Shown here piece after piece: positions 47,291 through 64,000 of a DNA stretch of 64,000 nt. Within the stretch, counting starts at the first letter, position 1. Every line of letters starts with the position of its first letter. Made by a program: the position numbers and the translations under genes. Source of the DNA: Macrostomum lignano (lineage: Eukaryota); the NCBI GenBank assembly GCA_002269645.1, contig NIVC01000390.1:477516-541515 (forward strand). The letters are read 5' to 3'. A model generated the notes under the pieces. The model had not been told where the DNA came from, did not search any database, and saw nothing but the letters and a program-made list of their open reading frames with translations.

Positions 47291-50200
47291 ATGCTATCCG
47301 CTAAGCTGAGCCAGTCTGTCCGCCTCCTCTTGCCCAGGGCCGCAGCGGCCGCCGCCCGCCCGCTGTCCGGCGGCCCGGCTATTCCGGAGCCGATTCGCCA
47401 ACCCGAAGTGAAATTCAACAAACTATTCATTAACAACGAATGGGTTGACTCGGTGTCTGGTAAAACGTTTCCAACTATTAATCCGGCTACGGGCGAGGTC
47501 ATCACCCAGGTGGCCGAGGGTGACAAAGCCGATATTGACAAGGCCGTTGATGCGGCTAACCAGGCCTTTCGCTACGGTTCTGAATGGCGCCGAATGGACG
47601 CTTCTCAGCGGGGCAACCTGATGAACAAGCTTGCCGATCTGATGGAGCGGGACAAAGTCTATCTTGCGGTTAGTTAACTAGAAAATATAGGCTTGGGCAT
47701 AATCCATATACTAAAAATGGTCTGTCGGTATGTGTGTGTGTGTATGTGTGTGTGTGTGATCGATTTTAGCAAAAACGGCTCAACCGATTTTCTTCGAACT
47801 TGCACTGTTCGATCAGAAATTTTCCCGTGACAGTACATGCATCGTGGCTAAGAAATTGCTTGATGCTAAAGGGATTAAATATTCGAAAAACATGCTTTTT
47901 TGCAAAGGTCAAGCAGCTCTTTCGACTTGAAATGCATCGTAAGAATGCTAGCAGAAAAACTGACTGGTTGAATTCTGATTCTGAAATAGATTGCATCACA
48001 ATACACTTTATTTATCGTCTGTGTACTGGCTGAATTTGACACTCAATTGAATTGCGTCACAGCTTTGAGTGTGAAAGCATAGCGCAGTACTGAATTTATA
48101 TTACGTAACCATATTGTAAACTTTCATAGACACTGGTACTGACTTGCCTAAGAAATTGATTATGTCATAACTGCTTCGTGAGACTTTTTACTCTACCTGA
48201 CTTGGTGTGAGTGTTGAATTATATAAGTGGTACAACATCACTGATAACTTCGATGAGAGCTAGCCTAGAGCTGAGCAGACCAGACTGCTAATGCAGCGAC
48301 CTAGGTTCGAATCTAAGTAGTTTAAAAGTAGTAGTGTAAATTTTTTTATTAAAAGGTTTTATTAAAGGACTAAATAAAAACACTTAGATTACTGCACTCG
48401 ATAAGCCAAGGATTATTGCTATTAATAAACCAAGGACTACTGCACTCGATAAACCAAGGACTATTGCTCTTGGCAAACCAAGGATTACTGCACTCAAGAA
48501 GCCAAGGATTATTGCTATTAATAAACCAAGGATTACTGCACTTGGAAAACCAAGGATTACTGCACTCGATAAACCAAGGACTATTGCTCTTGGCAAACCA
48601 AGGATTACTGCACTCAGGAAGCCAAGGATTATTGCACTTGGAAAACCAAGGATTACTGCACTCGATAAACCAAGGACTATTGCTCTTGGCAAACCAAGGA
48701 TTACTGCACTCAAGAAGCCAAGGATTATTGCTATTAATAAACCAAGGATTACTGCACTTGGAAAACCAAGGATTACTGCACTCGATAAACCAAGGACTAT
48801 TGCTCTTGGCAAACCAAGGATTACTGCACTCAAGAAGCCAAGGATTATTGCACTTGGAAAACCAAGGATTACTGCACTCGATAAACCAAGGACTATTGCA
48901 CTTGATAAACCAAGGAATATTGCACTTGATAGGCCAAGGATTACTGCACTTGATAAACCAAGGATTATTGCACTTGATAGGCCAAAGATTACTGCGCTTG
49001 ATAAACCAAGGATTATTGCACTTGATAAACCAAGGATTATTGCACTTGATAAGCCAAGGATTACTGCGCTTGATAAACCAAGGATTATTGCACTTGATAA
49101 ACAAAGGATTATTGCACTTGATAAACAAAGGATTATTGCACTTGATAAACAAAGGATTATTGCACTTGATAAACCAAGGATTATTGCACTTGATAAGCCA
49201 AGGATTATTGCACTTGATAAGCCATGGATTATTGCACTTGATAGTAAAGAATGTTGCACTTGATAAGCCAAGGATTAATGCACTGGATTATTCAAGGATT
49301 ATTGATATTAATAAACCAAGGACTACTCCACTCGATAAACCAAGGATTATTGCTCTTAATAAACCAAGGATTACTGCACTTGGAAAACTAAGGATTACTG
49401 CACTCGATAAACCAAAGACTATTGCACTTGATAAACCAAGGATTATTGCACTTGATAGGCCAAGGATTACTGCACTTGATAAACCAAGGATTATTGCACT
49501 TGATAGGCCAAAAATTACTGCGCTTGATAAACCAAGGATTATTGCACTTGATAAACCAAGGATTATTGCACTTGATAAGCCAAGGATTATTGCACTTGAT
49601 AAACCAATGATTATTGCAGTTGATAAGCCAAGGATTATTGCATCTGATAAACCAAAGATTATTGCACTTGATAAACCAAGGATTATTGCACTTGATAAAC
49701 AAAGGATTATTGCACTTGATAGGCCAAAGATTACTGCGCTTGATAAACCAAGGATTATTGCACTTGATAAACCAAGGATTATTGCACTTGATAAGCCAAG
49801 GATTATTGCACTTGATAAACCAAGGATTATTGCAGTTGATAAGCCAAGGATTATTGCATCTGAAAAACCAAGGATTATTGCACTTGATAAACCAAGGATT
49901 ATTGCACTTGATAAACCAAGGATTATTGCACTTGATAAACCAAGGATTATTGCTCTTGGCAAACCAAGGATTACTGCACTCGATAAGCCAAGGATTATTG
50001 CTCTTAATAAACCAAGGATTACTGCACTTGGAAAACTAAGGATTACTGCACTCGATAAACTAAGGATTATTGCTCTTGGCAAACCAAGGATTATTGCACT
50101 TGATAGGCCAAGGATTACTGCACTTGATAAACCAAGGATTATTGCACTTGATAAACCAAGGATTATTGCACTTGATAAGCCAAGGATTATTGCACTTGAT

Positions 50201-53200
50201 AGGCCAAGGATTACTGCGCTTGATAAACCAAGGATTATTGCACTTGATAAACCAAGGATTATTGCAGTTGATAAGCCAAGGATTATTGCACTTGATAAAC
50301 CAAGGATTATTACACTTGATAAACCAAGGATTATTGCACTTGATAAACCAAGGATTATTGCACTTGATAGGCCAAGGATTACTGCACTTGATAAACCAAG
50401 GATTATTGCACTTGATAGGCCAAAGATTACTGCGTTTGATAAACCAAGGATTATTGCAGTTGATAAGCCAAGGATTATTGCACTTGATAAACCAAGGATT
50501 ATTTCACTTGATAAACCAAGGATTATTGCACTTGATAAACAAATATTGCACTTGATAAACCAAGGATTATTGCACCTGATAAGCCAAGGATTACTGCGCT
50601 AGATAAACCAAGGATTATTGCACTTAATAAACCAAGGATTATTGCACTTAATAAACCAAGGATTATTGCACTTGATAAACCAAGGATTATTGCACTTGAT
50701 AAACAAAGGATTATTGCACTTGATAAACCAAGGATTATTGCACTTTATAAGCCAAAGATTACTGCACTTGATAAACCAAGGATTATTGCACTTGATAAAC
50801 CAAGGATTATTGCACTTGATTAATCAAGGATTATTGCTATTAATAAACCAAGGATTATTGCACTAGCTGAGAAGCTGATTACTGCGCTGTCTAAAAAAGA
50901 GATTATTGCGCTCGCTGAGACGTGGATTGTTGCACAACCTGAGAAAGCGATTATTGCATTAGCGGAAGTAACATTTGCACTAGCTACTTGCTGTCTCGTG
51001 GATGCTTGCTCTCGAGGGGGGATACTTGCTATTTGGGAGAGGGGGTACTGGCTACATGCATGGGATTCTTTCTATCCAGGGATGCTTGCTATTCAGGGAT
51101 TCTTGCTATCTGCAGGATGCTTGCTATTTAGGGATTCTTGCTATCTGCAGGATGCTTGCTATCTGGGTGGATGCTTCTATAATATCTGGGGGGTGCTTGC
51201 TATCTGCAGAATGCTTCTATAATATCTGGGGGTGCTTGCTATCTGCAGAATGCTTGCTATCTGGGTGGATGCTTCTATAATATCTGGGGGGTGCTTGCTA
51301 ATCTGCAGATGCTTGCTATCTGTGGTGATTCTTGCTATGAGCATTAGAGGATGCTTGCTATCTGCGATTGTTCACTTTTGGAGGGGGTTGCTTGCTGTCT
51401 TGGGAATATTTTCTATTTAGGGAAACGATATTTTGTTGACTGTTTGTTAATTTTAGAGAAAAAGTGATTTTTTAATTTTGCAAACATCTTAGTCCGTGAC
51501 AATTTTACACGAATAAGGTGATTTTTAAAATGTGAAGAAGGAATTAGTGTTTAAGAAAATGTGTTTTTTTATTGTTTTCCATGAACTATTTTTGCTCCTT
51601 TCTTATTGGGCGCCCCGAAGGGGGGCCGCACTAGATTGCTAGTAGTTTAACTAAAATCTACATGGTTTAGTTTTACCCCTTTCGTAAAATGAACTCTTGT
51701 ATCATTCATTTGTTTCTTTGACCCAGCCACGTTGTCTAGCTGGTGTACATCTAATTCTAATGCCTGACTTATTGTGTTACAGTCGCTAGAATCCTTGGAC
51801 AATGGCAAGCCGTATCTGTTCTCTTACCTGGCTGACGTTGAGCTCAGCATTCGTTGCTATCGGTGAGTTTATTGCATCGAGTTGCTGCATTAGCCAGCAG
51901 CAGCAGGGTTGAGCTGCACGTTTTCAACTATTTTGCTTTTCAAACTTCTATACCTTGCAGAGTGGGGTTTGGGGCATTATCCAATTCTCGTATTAGCTAT
52001 TCTTAAAGCTTGTGTTTGCAAGCACAATAGCCCTTTAATTGCGCTGTTTGCAGTGGGCCATCGTGCATTATGCATGATTAAATAGTATAGACAGAATTGC
52101 TATGTATATATGCATTGCATAACAATATGTATTTAAATTAAAATATTGAGTGAGAATTATCACAAATTAGCTGCGTGCCACATGCTCCATCATGTACGCC
52201 ACCTATGCTTGACGCCTTTATCAACCATGCTTGGCGCCTCTATCACCTATGCATGGCGCCCTTATCACCCATGCTTAGTGCCTCTATCACCCATTCTTGG
52301 CGCCCCTATCACCCATGCTTGGTGCCCTTATCACCCATGCTTGGCGCCTCTATCACCCATGCATGGCGCCCTTATCACCCATGCTTGGTGCCTCTATCAC
52401 CCATGCTTGGTGCCCTTATCACCCATGCTTGGCGCCTCTATCACCCATTCATGGCGCCCTTATCACCCATGCTTGGTGCCCTTATCACCCATGCTTGGCG
52501 CCTCTATCACCCATGCTTGGCGCCTCTATCACCCATGCTTGGCGCCCCTATCACCCATGCTTGGTGCCCTTATCACCCATGCTTGGCGCCTCTATCACCC
52601 ATGCTTGGCGCCCCTATCACCCATGCTTGGTGCCCTTATCACCCATGCTTGGCGCCTCTATCACCCATGCTTGGCGCCTCTATCACCTATGCTTGGCGCC
52701 TCTATCACCCATGCTTGGCGCCTCTATCACTTATGCTTGGCGCCCTTATCACCCATGCTTGGCGCCTCTATCACCCATGCTTGGCGCCTCTATCACCTAT
52801 GCTTGGCGCCTCTATCACCCATGCTTGGCGCCTCTATCACCTATGCTTGGCGCCTCTATCACTTATGCTTGGCGCCCTTATCACCCATGCTTGGCGCCTC
52901 TATCACCCATGCTTGGCGCCTCTATCACCCATGCTTGGCGCCTCTATCACCTATGCATGGCGCCCTTATCACCCATGCTTGGCGCCTCTATCACTTATGC
53001 TTGGCGCCTCTATCACCTATGCATGACGCCCTTATCACCCATGCTTGGCGCCTCTATCACCTATGCTTGGCGCCTCTATCACCCATGCTTGGCGCCTCTA
53101 TCACCCATGCTTGGCGCCTCTATCACCTATGCCTGACGCCCCTATCACCGATGCCTGGCGCCCCTGTACCTATGCTTGGCGCCTTTATCACCCATGCTTG

Positions 53201-55189
53201 GTTGATCTATTGAATCGTTAGATTAACTTGTTGAGGGCTTCTGGGCCTTTTATTGGTCTTTTATTACCTTGGATAATAAATTTGCCATCTCCATAGTTAC
53301 TACGCCGGCTGGGCCAACAAGAACCACGGCAAGACCATCCCGGTTGACGGCAACGTGTTCTGCTTCACCCGACACGAGCCGGTCGGTGTCTGCGGCCAAA
53401 TTATTCCGTGGAATTTTCCTCTACTGATGCAGGCCTGGAAGCTGGGCCCGGCGCTCAGCATGGGCAACACCGTTGTGATGAAGACGGCCGAGCAGACTCC
53501 CCTTACTGGGAATTATCTTGCCCAGCTGGCCAAGGAGGCCGGATTTCCACCCGGCGTGCTCAATATTGTGCCTGGCTATGGGCCCACCGCAGGCGCAGCT
53601 CTGGCGCTGCACAACAAAGTTGACAAGGTGAGCCGCTGTTCGATGTAGTGATCCAAGATTTCATTATAAATAAGATTGAAAATTGCCTGTCACCCAGCAG
53701 TATGCCAACCAACTGGGGATAAGTGGATAACCAACTTAGGATAAGTAGATAACCAACTTAGGATAAGTGGATAACCAACTTAGGATAAGTGGATAACCAA
53801 CTAAGGATATGTGGATAACTAACTGAGGATAAGTGGATAACCAACTAAGGATATGTGGATAACCAACTTAGGATAAGTGGATAACCAACTAAGGATAAGT
53901 GGATAACCAACTGAGGATAAGTGGATAACCAACTAAGGATATGTGGATAACCAACTTAGGATAAGTGGATAACCAACTGAGGATAAGTGGATAACCAACT
54001 GAGGATAAGTGGATAACCAACTAAGGATATGTGGATAACCAACTGCGGATAAGTGGATAACCAACTGAGGATATGTGGATAACCATTTAAGGATAACAAT
54101 ATCTAGGTTTACAAACCAAAAACATGCTTACTATCCCCGAATGACGGATAACAATAGGGAAAAATGTTATTAAGCCAGCCATATCTTTTAATCCTTTCGT
54201 TAATCCTTTTGATTACCAGAACAAAAATGTCTTTAATTTGAAAAATAGCCAGAAGTCACAAGCAGAATGCGTGGCAAATCCATCAATTTCTAATTCACTT
54301 ACCCTCCCCCATGCAGCTGGCCTTCACCGGCAGCACGGAGGTCGGCCGCCTGATCCCGCAGTACGCCGGCCAGAGCAATCTGAAGCGCGTCAGCCTCGAG
54401 CTGGGCGGCAAGAGTCCCAATGTGGTCTTCTCCGACGCTGATCTTGAGTACGCCGTTGAGAAGTCGCACTTTGCTCTATTCTTCAACCAGGGCCAGTGCT
54501 GCTGCGCCGGCAGTCGCACCTTTGTTGAGGAGTCCATCTACGACAAATTTGTCGAGATGAGCGTCGAGCGGGCCAAGAAGCGTCTGGTTGGCGACCCTTT
54601 CAACCTCAACACGGAACAGGGACCGCAGATCGACCAGGAGCAGATGGGCAAAATTCTTGAGTTGATCAAGAGCGGCAAGAGCCAGGGTGCTAAGCTGCTC
54701 ACTGGCGGTGCTCAGCACGGCGATAAGGGTTACTTTGTGCAGCCGACCATCTTCTCCGATGTCCAGGTTTGCTGATTTGAAATGCTTGAATATCTCGACT
54801 GGCTTTGAATTTCCTCAACAAATAGCTACCCATCCGTCCCACCAAACCCGCCCCAGGACGAGATGCGCATCGCCCAGGAGGAGATCTTCGGCCCGGTCAT
54901 GCAGATCATGAAGTTCAAATCTGTCGACGAGCTGATCGAACGCGGCAACAAGACCATCTACGGCCTGGCAGCCGGCATCTTCACCAAAGACCTGGACAAG
55001 GCCATGCACGTCAGCCAGGGCCTGCGCGCTGGCACCATCTGGATCAACGAGTTCGATCATTTCGACGCCGCCGCTCCTTTCGGCGGTTTCAAGATGTCCG
55101 GCAACGGCCGAGAGCTGGGCGAGTACGGCCTGGAGGCCTACACCGAGATCAAGTGCGTCATGATACGCCTGGCCGAGAAGAATAGCTAA
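47291..55189 (+). CDS. ALDH2: Mitochondrial aldehyde dehydrogenase (ALDH2/ALDH1 family); join(47291..47668,51783..51862,53297..53627,54317..54766,54857..55189), 523 aa
   Basis: Arg/Ala-rich, acid-free presequence. Motifs [30 protein letters not shown], catalytic [19 protein letters not shown] and [15 protein letters not shown]. Total 1572 nt in frame. Confidence 0.94.
47703..47830 (+). mobile_element. Helitron-like 5' end in ALDH2 intron 1
   Basis: A|TCCATATACTAAAAATGG, then TCTGTC and (TG)n, then GATCGATTTT...AAAACGGCTCAACCGATTTT. Resembles 5' modules of invertebrate non-autonomous Helitrons (pattern recognition only). Confidence 0.5.
48252..48320 (+). pseudogene. Degenerate tRNA-like sequence (tRNA pseudogene or SINE head)
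   Basis: TAGCCTAGAGCTGAG (A-box-like), GACTGCTAAT (anticodon-arm-like, GCT) and GGTTCGAATC (B box). Acceptor stem not intact. Confidence 0.4.
48400..50870. repeat. 24-bp minisatellite (TTATTGCACTTGATAAACCAAGGA), ~100 copies
   Basis: Directly visible; explains the 728-aa and other ORFs at 48370-50866. Confidence 0.97.
51000..51642 (+). mobile_element. Helitron-like 3' portion: degenerate GATGCTTGCTATCTG repeats, hairpin and CTAG end
   Basis: GGGCGCCCCGAAGGGGGGCC followed by AGATTGCTAG|T ending at 51642, matching the 28.8-kb terminus. Confidence 0.6.
52190..53200. repeat. 22-bp minisatellite (TTGGCGCCTCTATCACCCATGC) in ALDH2 intron 2
   Basis: About 45 copies. Confidence 0.96.
53712..54095. 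repeat. 22-bp minisatellite (GGATAAGTGGATAACCAACTTA) in ALDH2 intron 3
   Basis: About 17 copies. Confidence 0.95.
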
Positions 55190-56334
55190 ATCTGTTAATG
55201 AACATGTTCGAGCTGCAGACATTAGAAACATTGAACTAGATATTAGATAAGTCAAATGACTACTTTCGATTGGGCGTCTATTCGGAGTTTTTTGGCTAAA
55301 TTTGTGCACCGAAGTACTGGTTATATATATAGACTAAGGCTAGGCCAATTTATCTGAGGACTAGACTGACTGTAGGATGCTATGTATAGCTCCTGTGTCC
55401 TCCCTGTAAGTTTCTATTGGCTGGCTCCTTTATCGATCGCTTACCCCCTCCTAGCTCAACCCCCCTCCGGCTGCGTCCGCCTTCCAAGCGCAAACCAATA
55501 AACCCCATTCCTCCCCCGTTTTATTGCCCTCGTCTAGCCATGAATGTACATTCTCAGTGGCGCTTGTGAGTGTACATTTTGACTAAACTGCACCCGATAC
55601 AAGCTGTTTTTTGTATGGCTTGAAAATTTAGAAAGCCGTGCGCATTCATATGCCTACAAGAAAGTAGGCCTAGGTGTATTATTTTCTAAATTTGCTAGAC
55701 GAGTTTTGGAGCGGTACAGCTTACAGCTAATAGTGTTTCTAATAACTGTGGTTCGACTAAAACCAAGGATTGTGTCGCTTTGATAAAACAAAAGCTATTA
55801 ATGAGAATAATCTCATAATTCTTGCCTTCTGTATTGAATTTTATTATAAAACAATACTCAATGGGAGGATTTTTTACAATGAGGTAACTTGTTTTGGGAC
55901 TCAAATATTAAATTTGATGTTTTTAAGATTCATTTTCTCATTGAAAATTTAAAGCTTGTGTTCCGGTGTTTTGTTATTACAGTGGCTGCTCACTAAAATG
56001 TACTGAACTGTCTGCTGACCTTTCTCCACAATAATATTGGGTGGCGTAATCTCACGTAGTTCAAATAAAAAGTTTTATTGTCCTATTGGTTGATTTTAAC
56101 CGTCATTAAATAAGAGTTCGTCTTTAAGCTTTCTTGGTTTTTGCTAAAGTGAATTACTCGTAATTATTACTTTAAAAGCAGGTGATTTTGGTCTCCAGGC
56201 TTAGGGTAAGAAAAATATAATATAGTCGTCATCTACATGACTATTAGCATTGGCGATATGAAAGCCAGCATCCTAAGCTACCGCATTTGCTGGGCCACGG
56301 TCCTGCCAGATCGCCAAGGCTGGGTCACCGCCAC

Positions 56335-57120
56335 AGCGCCACCCTCCCAGATCCTGAGTTGCTGGGCCACTGCCACCCTCCCAGATCCTCAGTTGCTGGG
56401 CCACTGCCACCCTCCCAGATCCTCAGTTGCTGGGCCACTGCCACCCTCCCAGATCCTCAGTTGCTGGGCCACTGCCACCCTCCCAGATCCTCAGTTGCTG
56501 GGCCGCTGCCACCCTCCCAGATCCTCAGTTGCTGGGCCACTGCCACCCTCCCAGATCCTCAGTTGCTGGGCCACTGCCACCCTCCAGATCCTCAGTTGCT
56601 GGGCCACTGCCACCCTCCCAGATCCTCAGTTGCTGGGCCGCTGCCACCCTCCCAGATCCTCAGTTGCTGGGCCACTGCCACCCTCCCAGATCCTCAGTTG
56701 CTGGGCCACTGCCACTCTCCCAGATCCTCAGTTGCTGGGCCACTGCCACTCTCCCAGATCCTCAGTTGCTGGGCCACTGCCACCCTCCCAAATCCTCAGT
56801 TGCTGAGCCAGCCTCCCAGATCCTCAGTTGCTGAGCCAGCCTCCCAGATCCTCAGTTGCTGGGCCAGCCTCCCAGATCCTCAGTTGTTGGATCAGCCTCC
56901 TAGATCCTCAGTTACTAGGCCAGTCTCCCAGATCCTCAGTTGCTGGGCCAGCCTCCCAGATCCTCAATTGCTGGGCCAGCCTCCCAGATCCTCAGTTGCT
57001 GGGCCAGCCTCCCAAAGTGTCAGTTGCTGAGCCAGTCTCCCAGATCCTCAGTTGCTGGGCCAGCCTCCCAAAGTGTCAGTTGCTGAGCCAGTCTCCCAGA
57101 TCCTCAGTTGCTGGGCCACC
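56335..57120. repeat. 34-bp minisatellite shifting to a 28-bp deletion variant
   Basis: CTCCCAGATCCTCAGTTGCTGGGCCACTGCCACC, then CTCCCAGATCCTCAGTTGCTGGGCCAGC. Confidence 0.95.
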
Positions 57121-57215
57121 ATCGCCCTCCCCGATCATTAGTGAGATTTTGGCGCCTGTTTAAACTGAAGATCAGCAGCCGATTTAAACAAAAGCGGTGC
57201 TCTTTGTGTCCCCAG

Positions 57216-60200
57216 TCGCAGTCGCTAACCACCCCGATCCCGGCCGCTCTGGCTGCCGAGCTGGCCAAGCAGCTGAACGATCGGCTGCCCACCGTGGAGG
57301 CGGTCCGCGAGCTCGCGCCCGGCATGCTGCGCGAATCCGCGGACCGGCTGGACCTGCTGCGCAAGCAGGCCCGCCTGCACGACTGCACGCGCTACGGACA
57401 GGCCAGACTGGCTTGCCGGCAGCTGCAGACCGAGGTTGCCGAACTGCTGCAACTGCACGCACAGCTCGCCGACCGCTGCCAGCGCCAGCTGGACAACTCC
57501 CGGCCGCTGCTGGTCGACGGCGGCCTAGCGGAGCGGGCGGCCGAGCTGGACTTGGCCGAGGCGCGGCTGGAGGCGATGAAGCTGCGGGAACAGCTGGAGT
57601 GCCAGGTGAGCTGGCAGGATTGTGTCCGGCTGATTGTGTCCTACATACATATATGTGTCCGGTTGATTTTGTCCTATAGATGTGTCCGGTTGATTTTGTC
57701 CTATAGATGTGTCCGGTTGATTGTGTCCTATATAGATGTTTCCGCTTGGTTGTGTCCTAGATAGATAGAGATGTGTCCGGTTGATTGTGTCCTAGATAGT
57801 TAGATATGTCCGGTTGATTGTGTCCTAGATAGAGAGATGTGTCCGGTGGATTGTGTCCTAGATAGATAGATGTGTCCAAAGCTGTCCGAAGCCAAACCCA
57901 TTGACCCTCCGCCCGCAGGCGAGCGCGGTGCAGGCCGCCCTGGTCACTGGCAGCTTCGACCGGGCCGCCGAGCAGTTCCGCCGGCTGGCCCTGATGCGCC
58001 GCGATCTCCGGCCGCCGGATCGCCTGCCCGAAGCCGAAGCTGCCGAGCTCCGCGCGGACGCCGAGGCCAGCCTGGAACACTGGGCCGGCCAGCTGCGCCG
58101 GAAGTTTAGCGCCGAATTCGCCGCTGCCGTGCGCGCCATTGGCTGGCCGTTTAACAGCGGCGGCTCGACCGGTGGCGGTTCCGCCGACACCTCCACTCCG
58201 GTATCCGCTTCCGGTTCCGCTTCGTCCGGCACTTCCGGTAGCAGCGGCGGCAAAGAGAGAGACTTTGTGGTGAGCTTTCGCCGATTTGCCCAGCTGCAAG
58301 TTCCCGCAGAGGCTTCCGGCCGGTCGCTGCCGCCTCTGGAGGTGATGCTGGAGCCGTTCCGAAAAAAATTCGCCTTCCACTTCTCTGGAGATCGGCCGAC
58401 TAACGATCCGGCCAGGCCGGAGATCTTCCTCACGCAGGTGCGATTATTAGCAGGTGGTTTTAGATTGGATAGGAGCATGGCGGAACCCACGAAAGGAGCC
58501 GAGAGGAGGGTAGCGAAGTCCACCAAAGGACCCGAGAGGAGGGTAGCGGAGCCCACCAAAGGACCCGAGAGGAGGGTAGCGGAGTCCACCAAAGGACCCG
58601 AGAGGAGGGTAGCGGAGTCCATCAAAGGACCCGAGAGGAGGGTAGCGGAGTCCACCAAAGGACCCGAGAGGAGGGTAGCGGAGTCCACCAAAGGACCCGA
58701 GAGGAGGGTAGCGGAGTCCATCAAAGGACCCGAGAGGAGGGTAGCGGAGTCCACCAAAGGACCCGAGAGGAGGGTAGCGGAGTCCACCAAAGGACCCGAG
58801 AGGAGGGTAGCGGAGCCCACCAAAGGACCCAAGAGGAGGGTAGCGGAGCCCACCAAAGGACCCAAGAGGAGGGTAGCGGAGCCCACCAAAGGACCGATAT
58901 TCCTTTGCAGCGTTTCCAGCATCCGGCATCAGAAGTAGAGAGAATTAGTGGCGTCCACCAACTTTTAAAGTAAAAATGAAGATTTTATCGAGGGTGGTAA
59001 TTGTCTGTCGCATAGTTTAAACCCCGCAATCATTGTTAACTACCGCCAGGTGCTGAAATGGATCAAAGAGCACGACGCCTTCCTAGGCCAGGTGGTGCAG
59101 CCCTGCCTTGATCAGGTTGGCATGTCCGCTTGGGACGTGCGCGAAGAATTCGCATCCGGCCTGATGGAGCTGGTCAAACGGAAGCTGGGCCAGTTGCTGG
59201 AGCAGTACAGGTAGAAGTTCGCTCTGGCTCTATTTTGGGGCTTGTGCAGGAATAATTGTCGTGTGGGTTGTCCTACAATTCACACCTATGAGGCCCGACC
59301 CCTAAGCACAGAGTGTTTCTGACAATTAGAAAATAGGGCGATGTCCAGGGAAATCGTATAATGATGCTAAGCAATGATTCGCTAAATTTTCCAGAGAGCT
59401 GCCCGACAAAGAGGAGGCTGACCTCCGCTTGGCGCACCTCATCAACGAGCTGCTGGCGCTGGACCGGGAGCTGGCCGCAGTCGGTCTGCCCTCGGCCGCT
59501 GCCACCGTCGGCAGCGTGCTTGGCGAGCCGCGCTGGCTGGCCTGGTGGGAGGGCCTGGAGGCCAAGTTTGCCCAGGCCCGCCTGGACGAGATCCTGCTGG
59601 CTGGCGACGCCTGGAGCCCCGCTGGCGGCGTTGAAGACTCGTCCTCGTCCTCGTCGGCGGCGGTGCCGCAGTGCGCGGAGGCGGTGATGGCGCTGGTGCA
59701 GGCGCTGGGCGGGCGGGCCAACCTGCTGCGCACCGACCTGCACAAGCGGGCCCGGCTGTTCCGCGTGCAGCTGGACGTGCTGGAGGACTTCCGGGTTCGA
59801 CTGCGGCAGGTGAGCAGCGCCCGGAGTGACTGGCTGTGCATGGAGTGACTGGCTGTGCCCGAAAGGACTGGCTGTGCCGGAGTGACTGGCTGTGCCGGAG
59901 TGACTGGCTGTGCTGGAGTGTGACTGGCTGTGCCCGGAGTGACTGGCTGTGCTAGAGTGACTGGCTGTGCCGAAGTGACTGGCTGTGCCCGGAGTGACTG
60001 GCTGTGCTAGAGTGACTGGCTGTGCTAGAGTGACTGGCTGTGCTGGAGTGTGACTGGCTGTGCCGATCAGGCTTTATGACCTATTGCGCCTTTGCTATGA
60101 GTAATTGTGCCGATGGTGCCATTGTATGGCCAATTGTGCTACTGTATGACCAATTGTGCTATTTATGACCAAAATGTCATAAATAGCACACAAATGTTAT

Positions 60201-61936
60201 GTGTAATTATTATTATGTGTAATTATATGATCAAAATTGTTTTTCCGACCGTCAGTGTGCTCCATTTTTGTGTCTAGATCTGATATCTTTACTTAATAGT
60301 ACACGGTCTGGCTTAACTCAATCTCGCGACCTTAGGTGACCCGCCGCTACCCGACCTCCGATCCGCGCTGGTTCGGCGCCCTGAACAGCCTGCAGTTTGC
60401 CCGGGACTCCCTCACGGACTGGGCCGATCAGCTCGATTACGCCGAGCTGTCCCGGCTGCCCGAGTCTGAGCGGAGCATCCACGGAGCTGTCGCCGCCGCC
60501 TCCGGCACCGCTGGTGATGAAGCTGCCAGGTGAAACTGTCATTTGTTGCACAAATGGTCAGCTAGGATTCAATGGTGTCTCTTGGCGTCTATGGGGGTCT
60601 CTAGAGATCTAGGATGTCTCTAGGGATCTAAAGGTGTATATAGATATCTAAGGGTGTCTCTAGAGATCTAGGGGTGTCTCTAGGGATCTGCAATCATTCA
60701 GAGTCTATCAAAGACACCCTTTGCAATGATTTGCAATCATTTTCCCTAGCAGAGCGCCGGCCACCGCAGCCGCAGGCCTGGCCGATCTGTCCAGCGCCGC
60801 TATCGCTGACGACGACGACTCCTCCGGGGCGGGCGTTTTCGCCCCGGTTGCTAGGCGCCTTGCCGCCACCCAGTCCGAACTGCTCGAGTCCCTAGTGCGC
60901 GGCATCCTTGACCAGCTGGCCGCCTTGTTGGAGAGCCTCGGCCCGGACACTTTCCTGTCTGGTCGGCCGAGCGACGCACCGGCTTTGGCCGCCCTGTTCC
61001 TGGCCGTCAGAGACTCGCTGCAGGCCTGCCGTGATCGCCTGCAGCCGGCCGTGTTCCGGCCCGTGTGGCGCCGTCTGGCCGCTGGGCTCAACCGGCTGCT
61101 CATGCGACAGCTGCTGGGCATGCGGTTCAGCCACGCCGGCGGCCTGCAGTTCGCGCACACAGTCACCAAGGTGAGCCGGCGCGCGTTCGGGCACTGCTCG
61201 AGCACCCTAGAGTTTCACATCCCTATAGAGTTTCACATCCCTATAGAGTTTCACATCCCTATAGAGTTTCACATCCCTATAGAGTTTCACATCCCTATAG
61301 AGGTTCACATCCTATAGAGGTTCACATCCCTATAGAGGTTCACATCCCTATAGAGTTTCACATCCCTATAGAGGTTCACATCCCTATAGAGTTTCACATC
61401 CCTATAGAGGTTCACATCCTATAGAGGTTCACATCCCTATAGAGGTTCACATCCCTATAGAGTTTCACATCCTATAGAGGTTCACATCCTATAGAGGTTC
61501 ACATCCCTATAGAGTTTCACATCCTATAGAGGTTCACAACCCTATAGAGGTTCACATCCCTATAGAGGTTCACATCCCTATAGAGGTTCACATCCCTATA
61601 GAGGTTCACACCCCTATAGAGGTTCACATCCTATAGAGTTTCACATTCTGATAAACCTGATAAATCGAACCCAACATCAAACCCACGCAGGTATTCATGC
61701 CGGTGTTCGCCCAGTACTGCGGCCGGCCGGACCGTCTGCTAGCCGAGAGCGCCCAGGCCTGCTGCCTGCTGGGCTTGGCGCGGGGCACCGCGGCGCTGCT
61801 GCGCCAGGCGCTGGCCGGACCGCCGCGCGATGGCGAAGATCCGCTGAGAATGCTGCTGGATCTGGGCGTGTCGTCGCTGACGCCCGAGGAGGCGCTGGCC
61901 GTGCTGAAGCGCCGGATTGACTTGGACCAGGCGTGA
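57216..61936 (+). CDS. RINT1: RAD50-interacting protein 1 / Tip20-like tethering subunit; join(57216..57605,57919..58437,59050..59210,59395..59809,60336..60529,60750..61170,61691..61936), 781 codons plus stop, start Met not in these exons
   Basis: PLEVMLEPFRKKFAFHFSGDRPTNDPARPEIFLTQ|VLKWIKEH, EFASGLMELVKRKL, LAHLINELLALDREL, FRVQLDVLEDFRVRL and FSHAGGLQF match RINT1. All junctions GT-AG and in phase; total 2346 nt. Confidence 0.9.
57620..57885. repeat. ~30-bp minisatellite (ATAGATGTGTCCGGTTGATTGTGTCCT) in RINT1 intron
   Basis: Directly visible. Confidence 0.9.
58478..58895. repeat. 33-bp minisatellite in RINT1 intron
   Basis: CCACCAAAGGACCCGAGAGGAGGGTAGCGGAGT, ~12 copies. Confidence 0.95.
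59820..60065. repeat. 18-bp minisatellite (GGAGTGACTGGCTGTGCC) in RINT1 intron
   Basis: The same family recurs at 62285-62550. Confidence 0.93.
61205..61650. repeat. 17-18 bp minisatellite (CTATAGAGTTTCACATCC) in last RINT1 intron
   Basis: About 25 copies; an isolated unit also occurs at ~62106-62123. Confidence 0.95.
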
Positions 61937-62284
61937 CCTGCCTGTGAAGATGCTGCAGGTTCTTATATACTACTCATATAGCTACTCATCATCTAGACAT
62001 ACTGGTTTAGGTTCGCCGTTTATCGAGTTCATAAATAAACTGATGCTGCTTCGCATCGGGTTATTCAGAGATCTGTTTTCTTACTGCAAGCAAAACATTT
62101 TCACACCCTAGAGTTTCACATCCGATAGTCCGATGATCTATGAACTTGCATGTAAAAATTATAGCAAGAGCACACAATCTGACTCGCGGTAAATTGAAAT
62201 TGACTTTTTTAATGGAATTGGAATCCGAGCAACATGTACTCTATCACAATCTATATGTACATGTATATCTCGAAATGGTTTATC

Positions 62285-62550
62285 GTCGGAGTGACTGGCT
62301 GCGCCGGAGTGACTGGCTGTGTCGGAGTGACTGGTTGTGCCGGAGTGACTGGCGGAGTGACTGGCTGTGTTGGAGTGACTGGCTGTGTCGGAGTGACTGG
62401 CTGTTCCCGGAGTGACTGGCTGTGCTGGAGTGACTGGCTGTGCCGGAGTGACTAGCTGTGCCGGAGTGACTAGCTGTGCCGCAGTGACTGTCCCGGATCG
62501 AGTGACAGCTGTCTGTCCCGAAGTGACTGGCTGTGCACGGAGTGACTGTC
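62285..62550. repeat. 18-bp minisatellite (GGAGTGACTGGCTGTGCC), second locus
   Basis: Directly visible. Confidence 0.92.
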
Positions 62551-63179
62551 TGTTCTATTCTCTGTCCTAATCTGTCTGATCTGTTCTAGGACTGGTCGAG
62601 CGCTCCATTTTATGATTGATTTTTACATGACCAATTTTACCCTTTTATGACTGATGATGATGCTGATGTTATGATTCATTGTGCCATTAAAAGACCGATA
62701 ATACCATCATACCCTCGTGACTGACAGTGCTTTGGCACCGTCTGTGTGCTCCATTATTGCGCCTGATGTAACACCCGGTGAGTACTGTTGCACAATTTAC
62801 ATGTACGTATAAGTCGGAACGGTTTTGATAAATTAGACAAAGTTCTAATTGAATAGTTGCAAAATAAACTTTAGAAGTACGAGGCTCAATAGGTTTACAT
62901 ACATCTACGTTTTCAAGAAATGATTGTTAGGTGAAGTGTGGCATGACTAAAAGCTTGTTCAAAGCTCGAACTACATGTAAGTCACTTTATATTGCTTCAT
63001 TCTTCCATATACATGTACTTATGGTAATGGAAGGTAAATTATATAAAGCGAGAATTTAACCTAATGGCCAAGGTCCAGTAGGCAATATTATTGCACTTGC
63101 AAGAAGCGAACTCGTACCTTGGTCATTACCTTAAATATTCTCGCTTTAAATATTTAACCTTCCATTGATTTGAGGTTGC

Positions 63180-63480
63180 ATTCACAAGCTCGAACTTTCA
63201 CAACGTCAAAAGCAAATGATTTCACAAGGTCGAAATTTTGCGTCGAAAAACTCGAATGGCAGTGCAGTCACTTTCACAATGTCGAAACTTCATAAAACTC
63301 GAAATTTCACGACTAACAAGAACCATTCGGTACTAAAGTGTTTCGGTGGGGTGAAATTTTGAGCTTGAGATTGAGAAGTGTAATTCGATCGAGTTTCGAT
63401 GCTATGAAGCTCTGACCTAGTGAACAAGGAATTGGTTCGATTGGCATAGACGACGTTGTGAAATTTCGAGTTTGTGAAGC
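63180..63480. repeat. TTTCACAA-TCGAA motif cluster with inverted copy (possible MITE relic)
   Basis: CATAAAACTCGAAATTTCACGAC (~63291-63313) is inverted relative to GTTGTGAAATTTCGAGTTTTGTG (~63456-63478). Confidence 0.45.
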
Positions 63481-64000
63481 CCCCATTTATTGATTGACTA
63501 CAACCCAGGTGATTGAGTAGCGCCCTTCTTACCTAGCCTTTACTACGTAACCTAATAATTTAGGCTATGTCAGATTCTATAAAATGCGGCCCCATATCCC
63601 AACCCAGCGAGAAGTGCTAGCTTCTGACTTTGTGGGACAGCTGATGAATAAGCAGGGTATCTTATATATTATTCTAACTTCAAGCTGCATTATTCAGATG
63701 CCGACTCATGCTTCAAGACAGTGATTTTGCCATATTCGTGTATTTAAGATCGCGCGTGTCACTTGACTGCAGTCATAAAAGTTCATTAAAGTTTATAAAA
63801 TGAAGCGACATCCAACAAATGTGAAATGTATGGGGTTTTAGGCCTATCAACTTTTCGGTAGGTCCAAGCCTAATTCTTAGGTTCGGCTTTGTACACTATT
63901 TTTATTGGTAATTCGATCTATTTTAAGTGGCCAGCGCGCTAGCAGTTAATAGGCAGACCTACTTAAATTTAAATTCGTCAGTTAAAAACAACAAAGTTGG

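What the first reader, a model, noticed from the sequence alone, without database searches (positions are those of the whole stretch)
57190..57330. RINT1 lacks its own start codon: candidate for initiation at the spliced-leader AUG
Seen: a strong acceptor CTCTTTGTGTCCCCAG| at 57215 is followed in phase 0 by SQSLTTPIPAALAAELAKQLNDRL. There is no in-frame ATG upstream in the open frame, and the first ATG (~57323) lies inside the helical N-terminal region. The seven exons already give 781 codons, near the ~790 aa I recall for RINT1. Established: flatworm spliced leaders end in AUG, which can act as initiator. Inference: SL trans-splicing yields M-SQSLTT.... An alternative is a cis route, ATG at ~55540 with donor GTGAGT plus a 7-nt microexon at ~56198-56204.
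Basis: partly seen in the sequence, partly recalled or inferred. Interest (0 to 1): 0.72.

Follow-up and report, generated by a model that had tools for sequence, protein, structure and literature searches.

The report
RINT1 start codon supplied by spliced leader
In the flatworm Macrostomum lignano, the RINT1 gene has no start codon of its own ahead of its conserved N-terminus and most likely borrows the AUG at the end of the trans-spliced leader. This mechanism is already documented in schistosomes, so the case is useful for annotation but not surprising.

Summary
The window is Macrostomum lignano Mlig_3_7, scaffold NIVC01000390.1. A seven-exon RINT1 gene (PF04437, E 2e-59) opens at acceptor CTCTTTGTGTCCCCAG|TCG (57215|57216). 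There is no in-frame ATG between the stop at 57084-57086 and ATG 57324 (codon 37).

- The M. lignano spliced leader (SL) ends in ATG (PMC8629364), and that ATG would be in frame.
- GenBank's model of a second genomic copy starts, flagged 'partial', exactly at this acceptor. That annotation pipeline cuts transcripts at experimentally mapped SL sites.
- All three genomic copies keep the acceptor and codons 1-36 almost invariant. The sequence just upstream is divergent and has frame-breaking indels.
- In the third copy, codon 37 is CTG, not ATG.
- Residues 12-31 match the conserved N-terminal motif of RINT1 homologues.

I could not obtain SL-junction reads or peptides, so trans-splicing at this site and use of the SL AUG remain inferred. 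SL-AUG initiation is established in flatworms (Cheng et al. 2006), so this is a new member of a known kind. Its main value is correcting mis-annotated 'partial' or truncated proteins.

The parts
57196..57215 (+). Pyrimidine-rich tract and AG acceptor (GGTGCTCTTTGTGTCCCCAG). This is the inferred SL trans-splice acceptor, with the junction at 57215|57216 (NIVC01000390.1 534730|534731).
   Evidence: All 20 bases are invariant in the three genomic copies, while the 96 bases upstream are 22/99 variable or gapped. The GenBank CDS of copy L001 starts at the homologous base.
57216..57323 (+). Codons 1-36 of RINT1 exon 1 (SQSLTTPIPAALAAELAKQLNDRLPTVEAVRELAPG). They are coding but contain no ATG and need an initiator from outside the gene.
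   Evidence: Only 1 of 108 columns varies among the three copies, and there are no indels. Residues 12-31 align to the conserved N-terminal motif of 95 RINT1 homologues. The profile score is 5.0 bits; 5 of 2000 shuffles score as high.
57324..57326 (+). First genomic in-frame ATG (codon 37). It is an internal hydrophobic helix position and a possible secondary start by leaky scanning.
   Evidence: It is CTG in copy L003 and Leu in UniProt A0A1I8H9I4. It aligns to a Leu/Phe/Ile column in homologues.
57216..57605 (+). RINT1 exon 1 (130 codons, phase 0 at both ends).
57919..58437 (+). RINT1 exon 2. GenBank's model of this copy (PAA84081.1, 626 aa) starts at the internal ATG at 57994.
59050..59210 (+). 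RINT1 exon 3.
59395..59809 (+). RINT1 exon 4.
60336..60529 (+). RINT1 exon 5.
60753..61170 (+). RINT1 exon 6.
61691..61936 (+). RINT1 exon 7, with the stop TGA at 61934-61936.
55190..57195 (+). Intergenic region and presumed outron between the aldehyde dehydrogenase stop (TAA 55187-55189; AATAAA 55497-55502) and the RINT1 acceptor. It contains a 34-nt tandem-repeat array at about 56338-57118.
   Evidence: The spacing is about 1.7 kb, or about 0.9 kb without the array. That is under the 1-kb repeat-adjusted operon threshold of PMC8629364.
55540..55565 (+). Rejected.
   Evidence: The donor is TTGAAT in L001 and GTGAAT in L003. The segment lies about 40 nt after the upstream gene's AATAAA.
56199..56205 (+). 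Rejected.
   Evidence: The donor is GTGGAC in both other copies, and the flanks carry indels.

Best explanation
RINT1 of Macrostomum lignano is made from a pre-mRNA whose 5' part, the outron, is removed by spliced-leader trans-splicing at the acceptor ending at 57215. The pre-mRNA is probably a polycistronic transcript running on from the aldehyde dehydrogenase gene upstream.

The 35-nt leader ends in AUG. Joined to TCG at 57216, this AUG is in frame and is the first AUG of the mature mRNA (nt 33-35). Translation from it gives M-SQSLTTPIPAALAAELAKQLNDRL..., 781 residues in all, which includes the conserved N-terminal helix motif of the RINT1/Tip20 family. The gene has no initiator of its own.

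The ATG at codon 37 is an ordinary internal Met. At most it could give a shorter minor isoform by leaky scanning in the two copies that still have it.

Shown here:
- the gene model and the missing genomic ATG;
- the in-frame geometry;
- conservation of the acceptor and of codons 1-36;
- loss of ATG37 in one intact copy;
- homology of residues 12-31.

Inferred:
- that the SL is really joined at this base in vivo;
- that ribosomes start at its AUG.
For: 1. The window is identical to M. lignano NIVC01000390.1. The species' SL ends in ATG (PMC8629364). SL plus exon 1 reads MSQSLTTPIP... with no other AUG for 143 nt.

2. GenBank PAA86945.1 (copy L001) is a 5'-partial CDS starting at the base homologous to 57216. 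Its upstream frame is open, so an ORF caller would have extended it had the transcript continued upstream. The annotation pipeline (TBONE) cuts transcripts at peaks of mapped SL reads (PMC5730564).

3. In three genomic copies, variable or gapped columns are 0/20 in the acceptor, 1/108 in codons 1-36, and 22/99 just upstream, including 1- and 2-nt indels (Fisher p = 4e-7).

4. All three copies have intact ORFs with dN/dS of 0.14-0.25. Copy L003 has CTG at codon 37, confirmed by UniProt A0A1I8H9I4 from another assembly. Codons 37-130 of that copy still evolve as coding sequence (10 synonymous versus 4 non-synonymous differences from the window copy). Its next in-frame genomic ATG is codon 121.

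5. Homologues found by exhaustive HMMER align from their own residues 8-24 to residues 11-25 here. A profile of 95 homologue N-termini aligns residues 12-31 to its positions 7-27. The score is 5.0 bits against -0.3 ± 1.2 for shuffles, with 5 of 2000 as high.

6. The upstream gene is on the same strand. The repeat-adjusted spacing is under 1 kb, which fits the published operon criterion.

7. Use of the SL AUG as an initiator is established in Schistosoma (Cheng et al. 2006, as cited in PMC12582326, PMC9851317 and PMC5832876).
Against:
- The SL AUG sits in a weak Kozak context (U at -3, U at +4), while ATG37 has G at -3. Substantial initiation at codon 37 is therefore possible in this copy.
- Codons 1-36 show no synonymous differences at all. 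Their conservation does not by itself prove translation; a regulatory 5' UTR could also be conserved.
- The motif match is modest (empirical p about 0.003).
- GenBank's model for this very copy starts at Met156, and the UniProt models start at Leu20 after another in-frame CAG (57270-57272). The exact SL site therefore lacks unanimous support from annotation.
Confidence: 0.75

Rival explanations
1. The mRNA is trans-spliced as above, or starts nearby, but the functional initiator is the genomic ATG at codon 37 (57324). Codons 1-36 would then be a conserved 5' UTR, giving a 744-residue RINT1.
For: ATG37 is the first genomic in-frame ATG and has a better context (G at -3) than the SL AUG. Codons 1-36 show no synonymous change, so constraint on the nucleotide sequence rather than the protein cannot be excluded.
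Against: ATG37 is CTG in the third copy, which is intact and under purifying selection. The position aligns to a Leu/Phe/Ile column in homologues. Residues 12-31 match the conserved RINT1 N-terminal motif, which this start would delete. An in-frame, stop-free SL AUG upstream would be met first by scanning ribosomes.
Confidence: 0.12
2. An upstream cis-spliced exon supplies the ATG. The candidates are the reader's route (ATG 55540, donor at 55566, 7-nt microexon 56199-56205) or another small exon such as ATG 55382-55405 with donor GTAAGT.
For: The required sequence elements exist in this copy.
Against: The 55382 candidate lies inside the aldehyde dehydrogenase 3' UTR, upstream of its AATAAA, and its donor weakens to GTAAAT in the other copies. 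A phase-0 scan of the whole 2-kb intergenic region found nothing better. The transcript-based GenBank model of L001 has no upstream exon.
Confidence: 0.05
3. Initiation occurs at a non-AUG codon inside exon 1 (for example CTG at codon 12, or CTG at codon 37 in copy L003), or the SL is added at a different in-frame AG (57221|57222 or 57272|57273).
For: Several in-frame AGs and near-cognate codons exist. The UniProt models of two copies start at Leu20, directly after the CAG at 57270-57272.
Against: Conservation begins 20 nt upstream of 57216, not further downstream. Homologues have at least 8 residues before the LN motif. Non-AUG starts are inefficient when an AUG lies upstream. The alternative-acceptor variants still rely on the SL AUG, so they are variants of the main explanation rather than true rivals.
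Confidence: 0.06

Closest known systems
Flatworm SL 3'-terminal AUG used as initiator methionine (Cheng, Cohen, Ndegwa & Davis 2006, J Biol Chem 281:733, Schistosoma mansoni); 'slORFs' in PMC9851317
   Same: The leader ends in AUG. The acceptor puts that AUG in frame with a conserved ORF that has no genomic start codon upstream of conserved residues. PMC9851317 reports that more than 40 schistosome cDNAs need the SL AUG.
   Different: The species is a free-living basal flatworm (Macrostomorpha), for which I found no gene-level report of SL-AUG dependence. Here the case rests on comparative and annotation evidence, not on cDNA or translation assays.
RINT1 / Tip20 family (Pfam PF04437), the ER tethering NRZ/Dsl1 complex subunit
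   Same: The C-terminal RINT1_TIP1 domain matches end to end (E 2e-59). The total length is similar to homologues: 781 aa against 746-810 aa, including a 792-aa sequence I recognise from memory as human RINT1. The N-terminal LxxxLNxxF-type motif is followed by a coiled coil.
   Different: The protein is highly Ala/Leu/Arg-rich and carries a Gly/Ser linker. Identity to other animals is only about 28-32%. There is no sequence-detectable relative in the PDB.
SL-resolved operons of M. lignano (Ustyantsev & Berezikov 2021, PMC8629364)
   Same: The upstream gene (aldehyde dehydrogenase) is on the same strand. The intergenic spacing is under 1 kb once the tandem array is subtracted. The acceptor is of the YYNCAG type.
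   Different: The raw spacing is 1.7 kb here and about 4 kb in copy L003, which has a 2.2-kb insertion. Polycistronic transcription was not shown here.

Membership tests
RINT1/Tip20 (PF04437) | RINT1_TIP1 domain above Pfam's gathering score | tested here: met
   202 bits against a cut-off of 30; residues 269-775 cover profile positions 2-514 of 514.
RINT1/Tip20 (PF04437) | N-terminal helix motif and coiled coil preceding the domain, collinear with homologues | tested here: met
   phmmer alignments start at query residues 11-25 against residues 8-24 of homologues. The N-terminal profile hits residues 12-31.
SL-AUG-initiated flatworm mRNA | The organism's spliced leader ends in AUG | tested here: met
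   The M. lignano SL sequence ends ...TTGCATG (PMC8629364). PMC10468722 also treats the final ATG as a start codon. No SL RNA gene lies in the window.
SL-AUG-initiated flatworm mRNA | The SL is joined at this acceptor in mature mRNA | tested here: inconclusive
   The evidence is indirect only. The GenBank 5'-partial CDS of the L001 copy starts at the homologous base, and the pipeline uses SL-read peaks. No reads or cDNA were obtainable.
SL-AUG-initiated flatworm mRNA | The SL AUG is in frame with the ORF and no stop intervenes | tested here: met
   SL plus exon 1 translates to MSQSLTTPIP....
SL-AUG-initiated flatworm mRNA | No genomic in-frame AUG upstream of conserved coding sequence | tested here: met
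   There is no ATG between 57087 and 57323. Conserved motif residues 12-31 lie upstream of ATG37, and ATG37 is absent from copy L003.
SL-AUG-initiated flatworm mRNA | Translation actually starts at the SL AUG | not testable with these tools
   This needs N-terminal proteomics, initiation-site ribosome profiling or a reporter assay.
Downstream gene of an SL-resolved operon | Same-strand upstream gene within 1 kb (repeat-adjusted), and the downstream gene is SL trans-spliced | tested here: inconclusive
   The geometry is met: about 1.7 kb raw and about 0.9 kb without the 56338-57118 array. Co-transcription was not tested.

The most novel reading that the evidence does not exclude
RINT1 may be one visible example of a sizeable class of conserved housekeeping genes in Macrostomum that have lost every genomic start codon and depend obligately on the SL AUG. 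Loss of the backup ATG would still be in progress: ATG37 has become CTG in one of three homeologous copies. If so, many GenBank and UniProt 'partial', truncated or Met-less M. lignano proteins are in fact complete. Trans-splicing would then be an essential step of gene expression, not merely an operon-resolving step, already at the base of the flatworm tree.
Probability: 0.5. Interest if true: 0.4.

Novelty: new member of a known kind. Interest (0 to 1): 0.3.

Why it matters
The mechanism itself is not new. The SL-donated initiator AUG was demonstrated in schistosomes in 2006 and is routinely mentioned for flatworms.

The value of this case is practical. Four database models of this one gene are wrong or incomplete because pipelines trim the leader together with its AUG. 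One is flagged 5' partial, one is truncated to Met156, and two start at Leu20. A simple rule would repair such models genome-wide: if an SL site is in phase with an open, conserved frame, add the SL Met.

The case also documents the mechanism in a basal, free-living and transgenically tractable flatworm. There a reporter test of SL-AUG initiation is feasible.

Tried and rejected
- Two further word-indexed protein searches, one with exon 1 and one with the SL-encoded prefix plus exon 1, aimed to find RNA-derived ORFs carrying the SL Met. Both returned nothing, not even the known identical protein. That index is uninformative for this low-complexity sequence.
I did not attempt it by another route.
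- Supplementary files of three M. lignano papers held no entry for Mlig004382, Mlig026114 or RINT1. Wasik et al. 2015 is not held.
- The SL sequence is not present in the window, so no SL RNA gene lies here.
- dN/dS on codons 1-36 is uninformative, with only one substitution.
- A PDB sequence search gave no relative.
Full report
**What is in the sequence.**
- A pyrimidine-rich acceptor, CTCTTTGTGTCCCCAG, ends at 57215.
- The frame from 57216 reads SQSLTTPIPAALAAELAKQLNDRL....
- That frame is open back to a TGA at 57084-57086 and holds no ATG.
- The first ATG in any frame is at 57324, which is codon 37 and in frame.
- Seven exons with canonical AG/GT boundaries give 781 codons. The exons are 57216-57605, 57919-58437, 59050-59210, 59395-59809, 60336-60529, 60750-61170 and 61691-61936.
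- The product matches Pfam RINT1_TIP1 end to end (E 2.2e-59).
- One correction: exon 6 has a NAGNAG acceptor, and two database protein models for this locus (P0001, P0004) use the CAG three bases downstream. Exon 6 then starts at 60753 and the protein has 780 codons.

**Where the window comes from.**
- A protein search returned a 100%-identical Macrostomum lignano entry.
- The locus fetched for GenBank PAA84081.1 is base-for-base identical to window 47994-64000.
- The window is therefore part of scaffold NIVC01000390.1 of assembly Mlig_3_7 (GCA_002269645.1).
- The acceptor junction 57215|57216 corresponds to 534730|534731 of that record.

**The spliced leader.**
- M. lignano has a single 35-nt SL, CGGTCTCTTACTGCGAAGACTCAATTTATTGCATG. 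About 30% of its genes receive it, and about 15% of genes lie in operons (PMC8629364).
- The leader ends in ATG. Joined to 57216, it reads ATG TCG CAG..., that is MSQSLTT....
- This would be the only AUG in the first 143 nt of the mature mRNA.
- No SL RNA gene lies in the window.

**Annotation evidence for the 5' end.**
The assembly holds three copies of the locus, as expected for this partly duplicated genome. They are the window, L001 (NIVC01000257.1) and L003 (NIVC01003594.1).
- GenBank's protein for L001 (PAA86945.1, 780 aa, flagged 'partial') begins SQSLTAP.... Its CDS starts at the base homologous to 57216.
- The reading frame upstream of that base is open in L001. An ORF caller would have extended the CDS if the transcript model had continued upstream.
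- The annotation came from a pipeline (TBONE) that cuts transcriptional units at peaks of mapped, SL-trimmed reads and then runs TransDecoder (PMC5730564).
- A 5'-partial CDS starting on the first base after an AG is what that pipeline yields when the trimmed leader carried the start codon.

The other models of this gene are also defective.
- GenBank's model of the window copy starts at Met156 in exon 2.
- Two UniProt models start at Leu20 with no Met.

**Comparison of the three copies.**
Aligning the 5' region and counting variable or gapped columns gives:

| Segment | Window coordinates | Variable or gapped columns |
|---|---|---|
| Upstream of the acceptor | 57100-57195 | 22 of 99 (includes 1- and 2-nt indels that break the upstream frame) |
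| Acceptor, 20 nt | 57196-57215 | 0 of 20 |
| Codons 1-36 | 57216-57323 | 1 of 108 |
| Codons 37-130 | 57324-57605 | 16 of 282 |

- The contrast between the upstream segment and codons 1-36 is significant (Fisher p = 4e-7).
- The exon boundary therefore sits at 57216, and what lies upstream is not coding.
- All three copies have intact full-length ORFs and evolve under purifying selection (dN/dS 0.14-0.25).

**The ATG at codon 37 is not conserved.**
- In L003 the codon is CTG. UniProt A0A1I8H9I4, from an independent assembly, shows Leu at that position.
- In that copy the next in-frame genomic ATG is codon 121. Yet codons 37-130 still show a coding pattern of change against the window copy: 10 synonymous and 4 non-synonymous differences.
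- A start codon upstream of codon 37 is therefore required in that copy, and the genome offers none.

**Homology of the N-terminus.**
- An exhaustive HMMER search found 502 relatives.
- Several full-length relatives align collinearly from near their own N-termini. For example, query residues 11-500 align to 8-488, 18-327 to 18-312, and 25-776 to 24-768.
- Homologues share an N-terminal motif of the type V..(L)N..F(G.D)...L, about 5-30 residues from their Met.
- In the alignment, M. lignano residues 12-31 (LAAELAKQLNDRLPTVEAVR) occupy this motif. Met37 falls in a Leu/Phe/Ile column.
- A profile built from the first 80 residues of 95 homologues, excluding M. lignano, scores the 36-residue peptide at 5.0 bits on profile positions 7-27. 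Shuffles score -0.3 ± 1.2 bits, and 5 of 2000 reach the real score.
- This support is modest but points the right way. Codons 1-36 encode the family's N-terminal helix, and starting at Met37 would delete it.
- From general knowledge, not tested here: in yeast Tip20 this N-terminal segment pairs with Dsl1 (ZW10 in animals).

**The cis alternative.**
- The sequence elements exist in this copy, but the donor GT is TT in L001. The microexon donor GTAAGA is GTGGAC in both other copies.
- The proposed ATG lies about 40 nt past the AATAAA (55497-55502) of the upstream aldehyde dehydrogenase gene, whose stop is at 55187-55189.
- A scan of the whole intergenic 2 kb for ATG-to-GT mini-exons in phase 0 found one other candidate with a decent donor (55382-55405). 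It lies inside the upstream gene's 3' UTR, and its donor weakens in the other copies.
- I reject the cis route as unlikely. Only cDNA can exclude it outright.

**Likely mechanism.**
- The upstream gene is on the same strand.
- The distance from its poly(A) signal to the RINT1 acceptor is about 1.7 kb. About 0.8 kb of that is a 34-nt tandem array, which leaves about 0.9 kb.
- That is under the repeat-adjusted 1-kb criterion used to call operons in this species.
- The simplest reading is that RINT1 is the downstream gene of a polycistronic unit. It is released by SL trans-splicing at 57215|57216 and translated from the SL AUG.
- The SL AUG has a weak context (U at -3, U at +4), and ATG37 has G at -3. 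Some leaky scanning to codon 37 is therefore plausible in the two copies that keep it.

**What is missing.**
- I could not obtain reads or cDNA across the junction.
- The supplements of the relevant papers do not list the gene.
- Trans-splicing at this exact base, and initiation at the SL AUG, are therefore inferred.

**Novelty and score.**
- The SL 3'-terminal AUG as initiator methionine was established in Schistosoma mansoni by Cheng et al. 2006. [quoted passage not shown]
- This is therefore a new, well-supported instance of a known mechanism in a species where it has not been examined gene by gene.
- It is useful for fixing annotation and as a tractable test case, but a specialist would not be surprised.
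- Interest 0.3; confidence in the main explanation 0.75.

Noticed in passing
window 47292-47345 (L001 4109-4160): The upstream aldehyde dehydrogenase has a genomic ATG (47292) followed by a mitochondrial-presequence-like [20 protein letters not shown]. However, the GenBank CDS of the L001 copy (507 aa) starts 16 codons downstream, one base after ...ttgcccag|g. If that AG is an SL site, trans-splicing would remove the native start and presequence. The SL AUG would then be +1 out of frame, opening a ~32-codon overlapping ORF. This may be an alternative isoform or an annotation artefact.
   Followed up: partly
window 57621-57877, 58480-58895, 59819-60065, 60574-60689, 61208-61646, 62287-62553: Five of the six RINT1 introns carry their own tandem-repeat array, with periods of 18-33 nt. 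The 18-nt unit CGGAGTGACTGGCTGTGC of intron 4 recurs in an array just downstream of the gene (62287-62553). Array lengths differ between the three genomic copies.
   Followed up: no
window 60747-60752: Exon 6 has a NAGNAG acceptor (tag|cag). Database models differ by one Ser (…DEAA[S]RAPA…), which suggests alternative use of both acceptors.
   Followed up: partly
L003 3288-5470 (between window-equivalent 55609 and 55616): The third copy has a ~2.2-kb insertion in the aldehyde dehydrogenase-RINT1 intergenic region, probably a mobile element. It raises the spacing to about 4 kb.
   Followed up: no
L001 10832-11368 (exon 2): The L001 genomic exon 2 is 18 nt longer than in the other copies, with an in-frame GGGSGG insertion in the Gly/Ser linker. 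The GenBank protein assigned to that locus (PAA86945.1, 780 aa) lacks these six residues, so protein and genome disagree.
   Followed up: no
window 57270-57273: Two UniProt models from two different copies (A0A1I8JGG3, A0A1I8H9I4) both start at Leu20 (LNDRL), directly after an in-frame CAG. This is either a gene-predictor artefact or a hint of a second in-frame SL acceptor.
   Followed up: no
protein P0007 (library hit, 447 aa): This protein is 59% identical to the C-terminal half of this RINT1, but the match is interrupted by stretches that look like frameshifted translation. It is probably a poor gene model or a degraded extra copy in Macrostomum.
   Followed up: no
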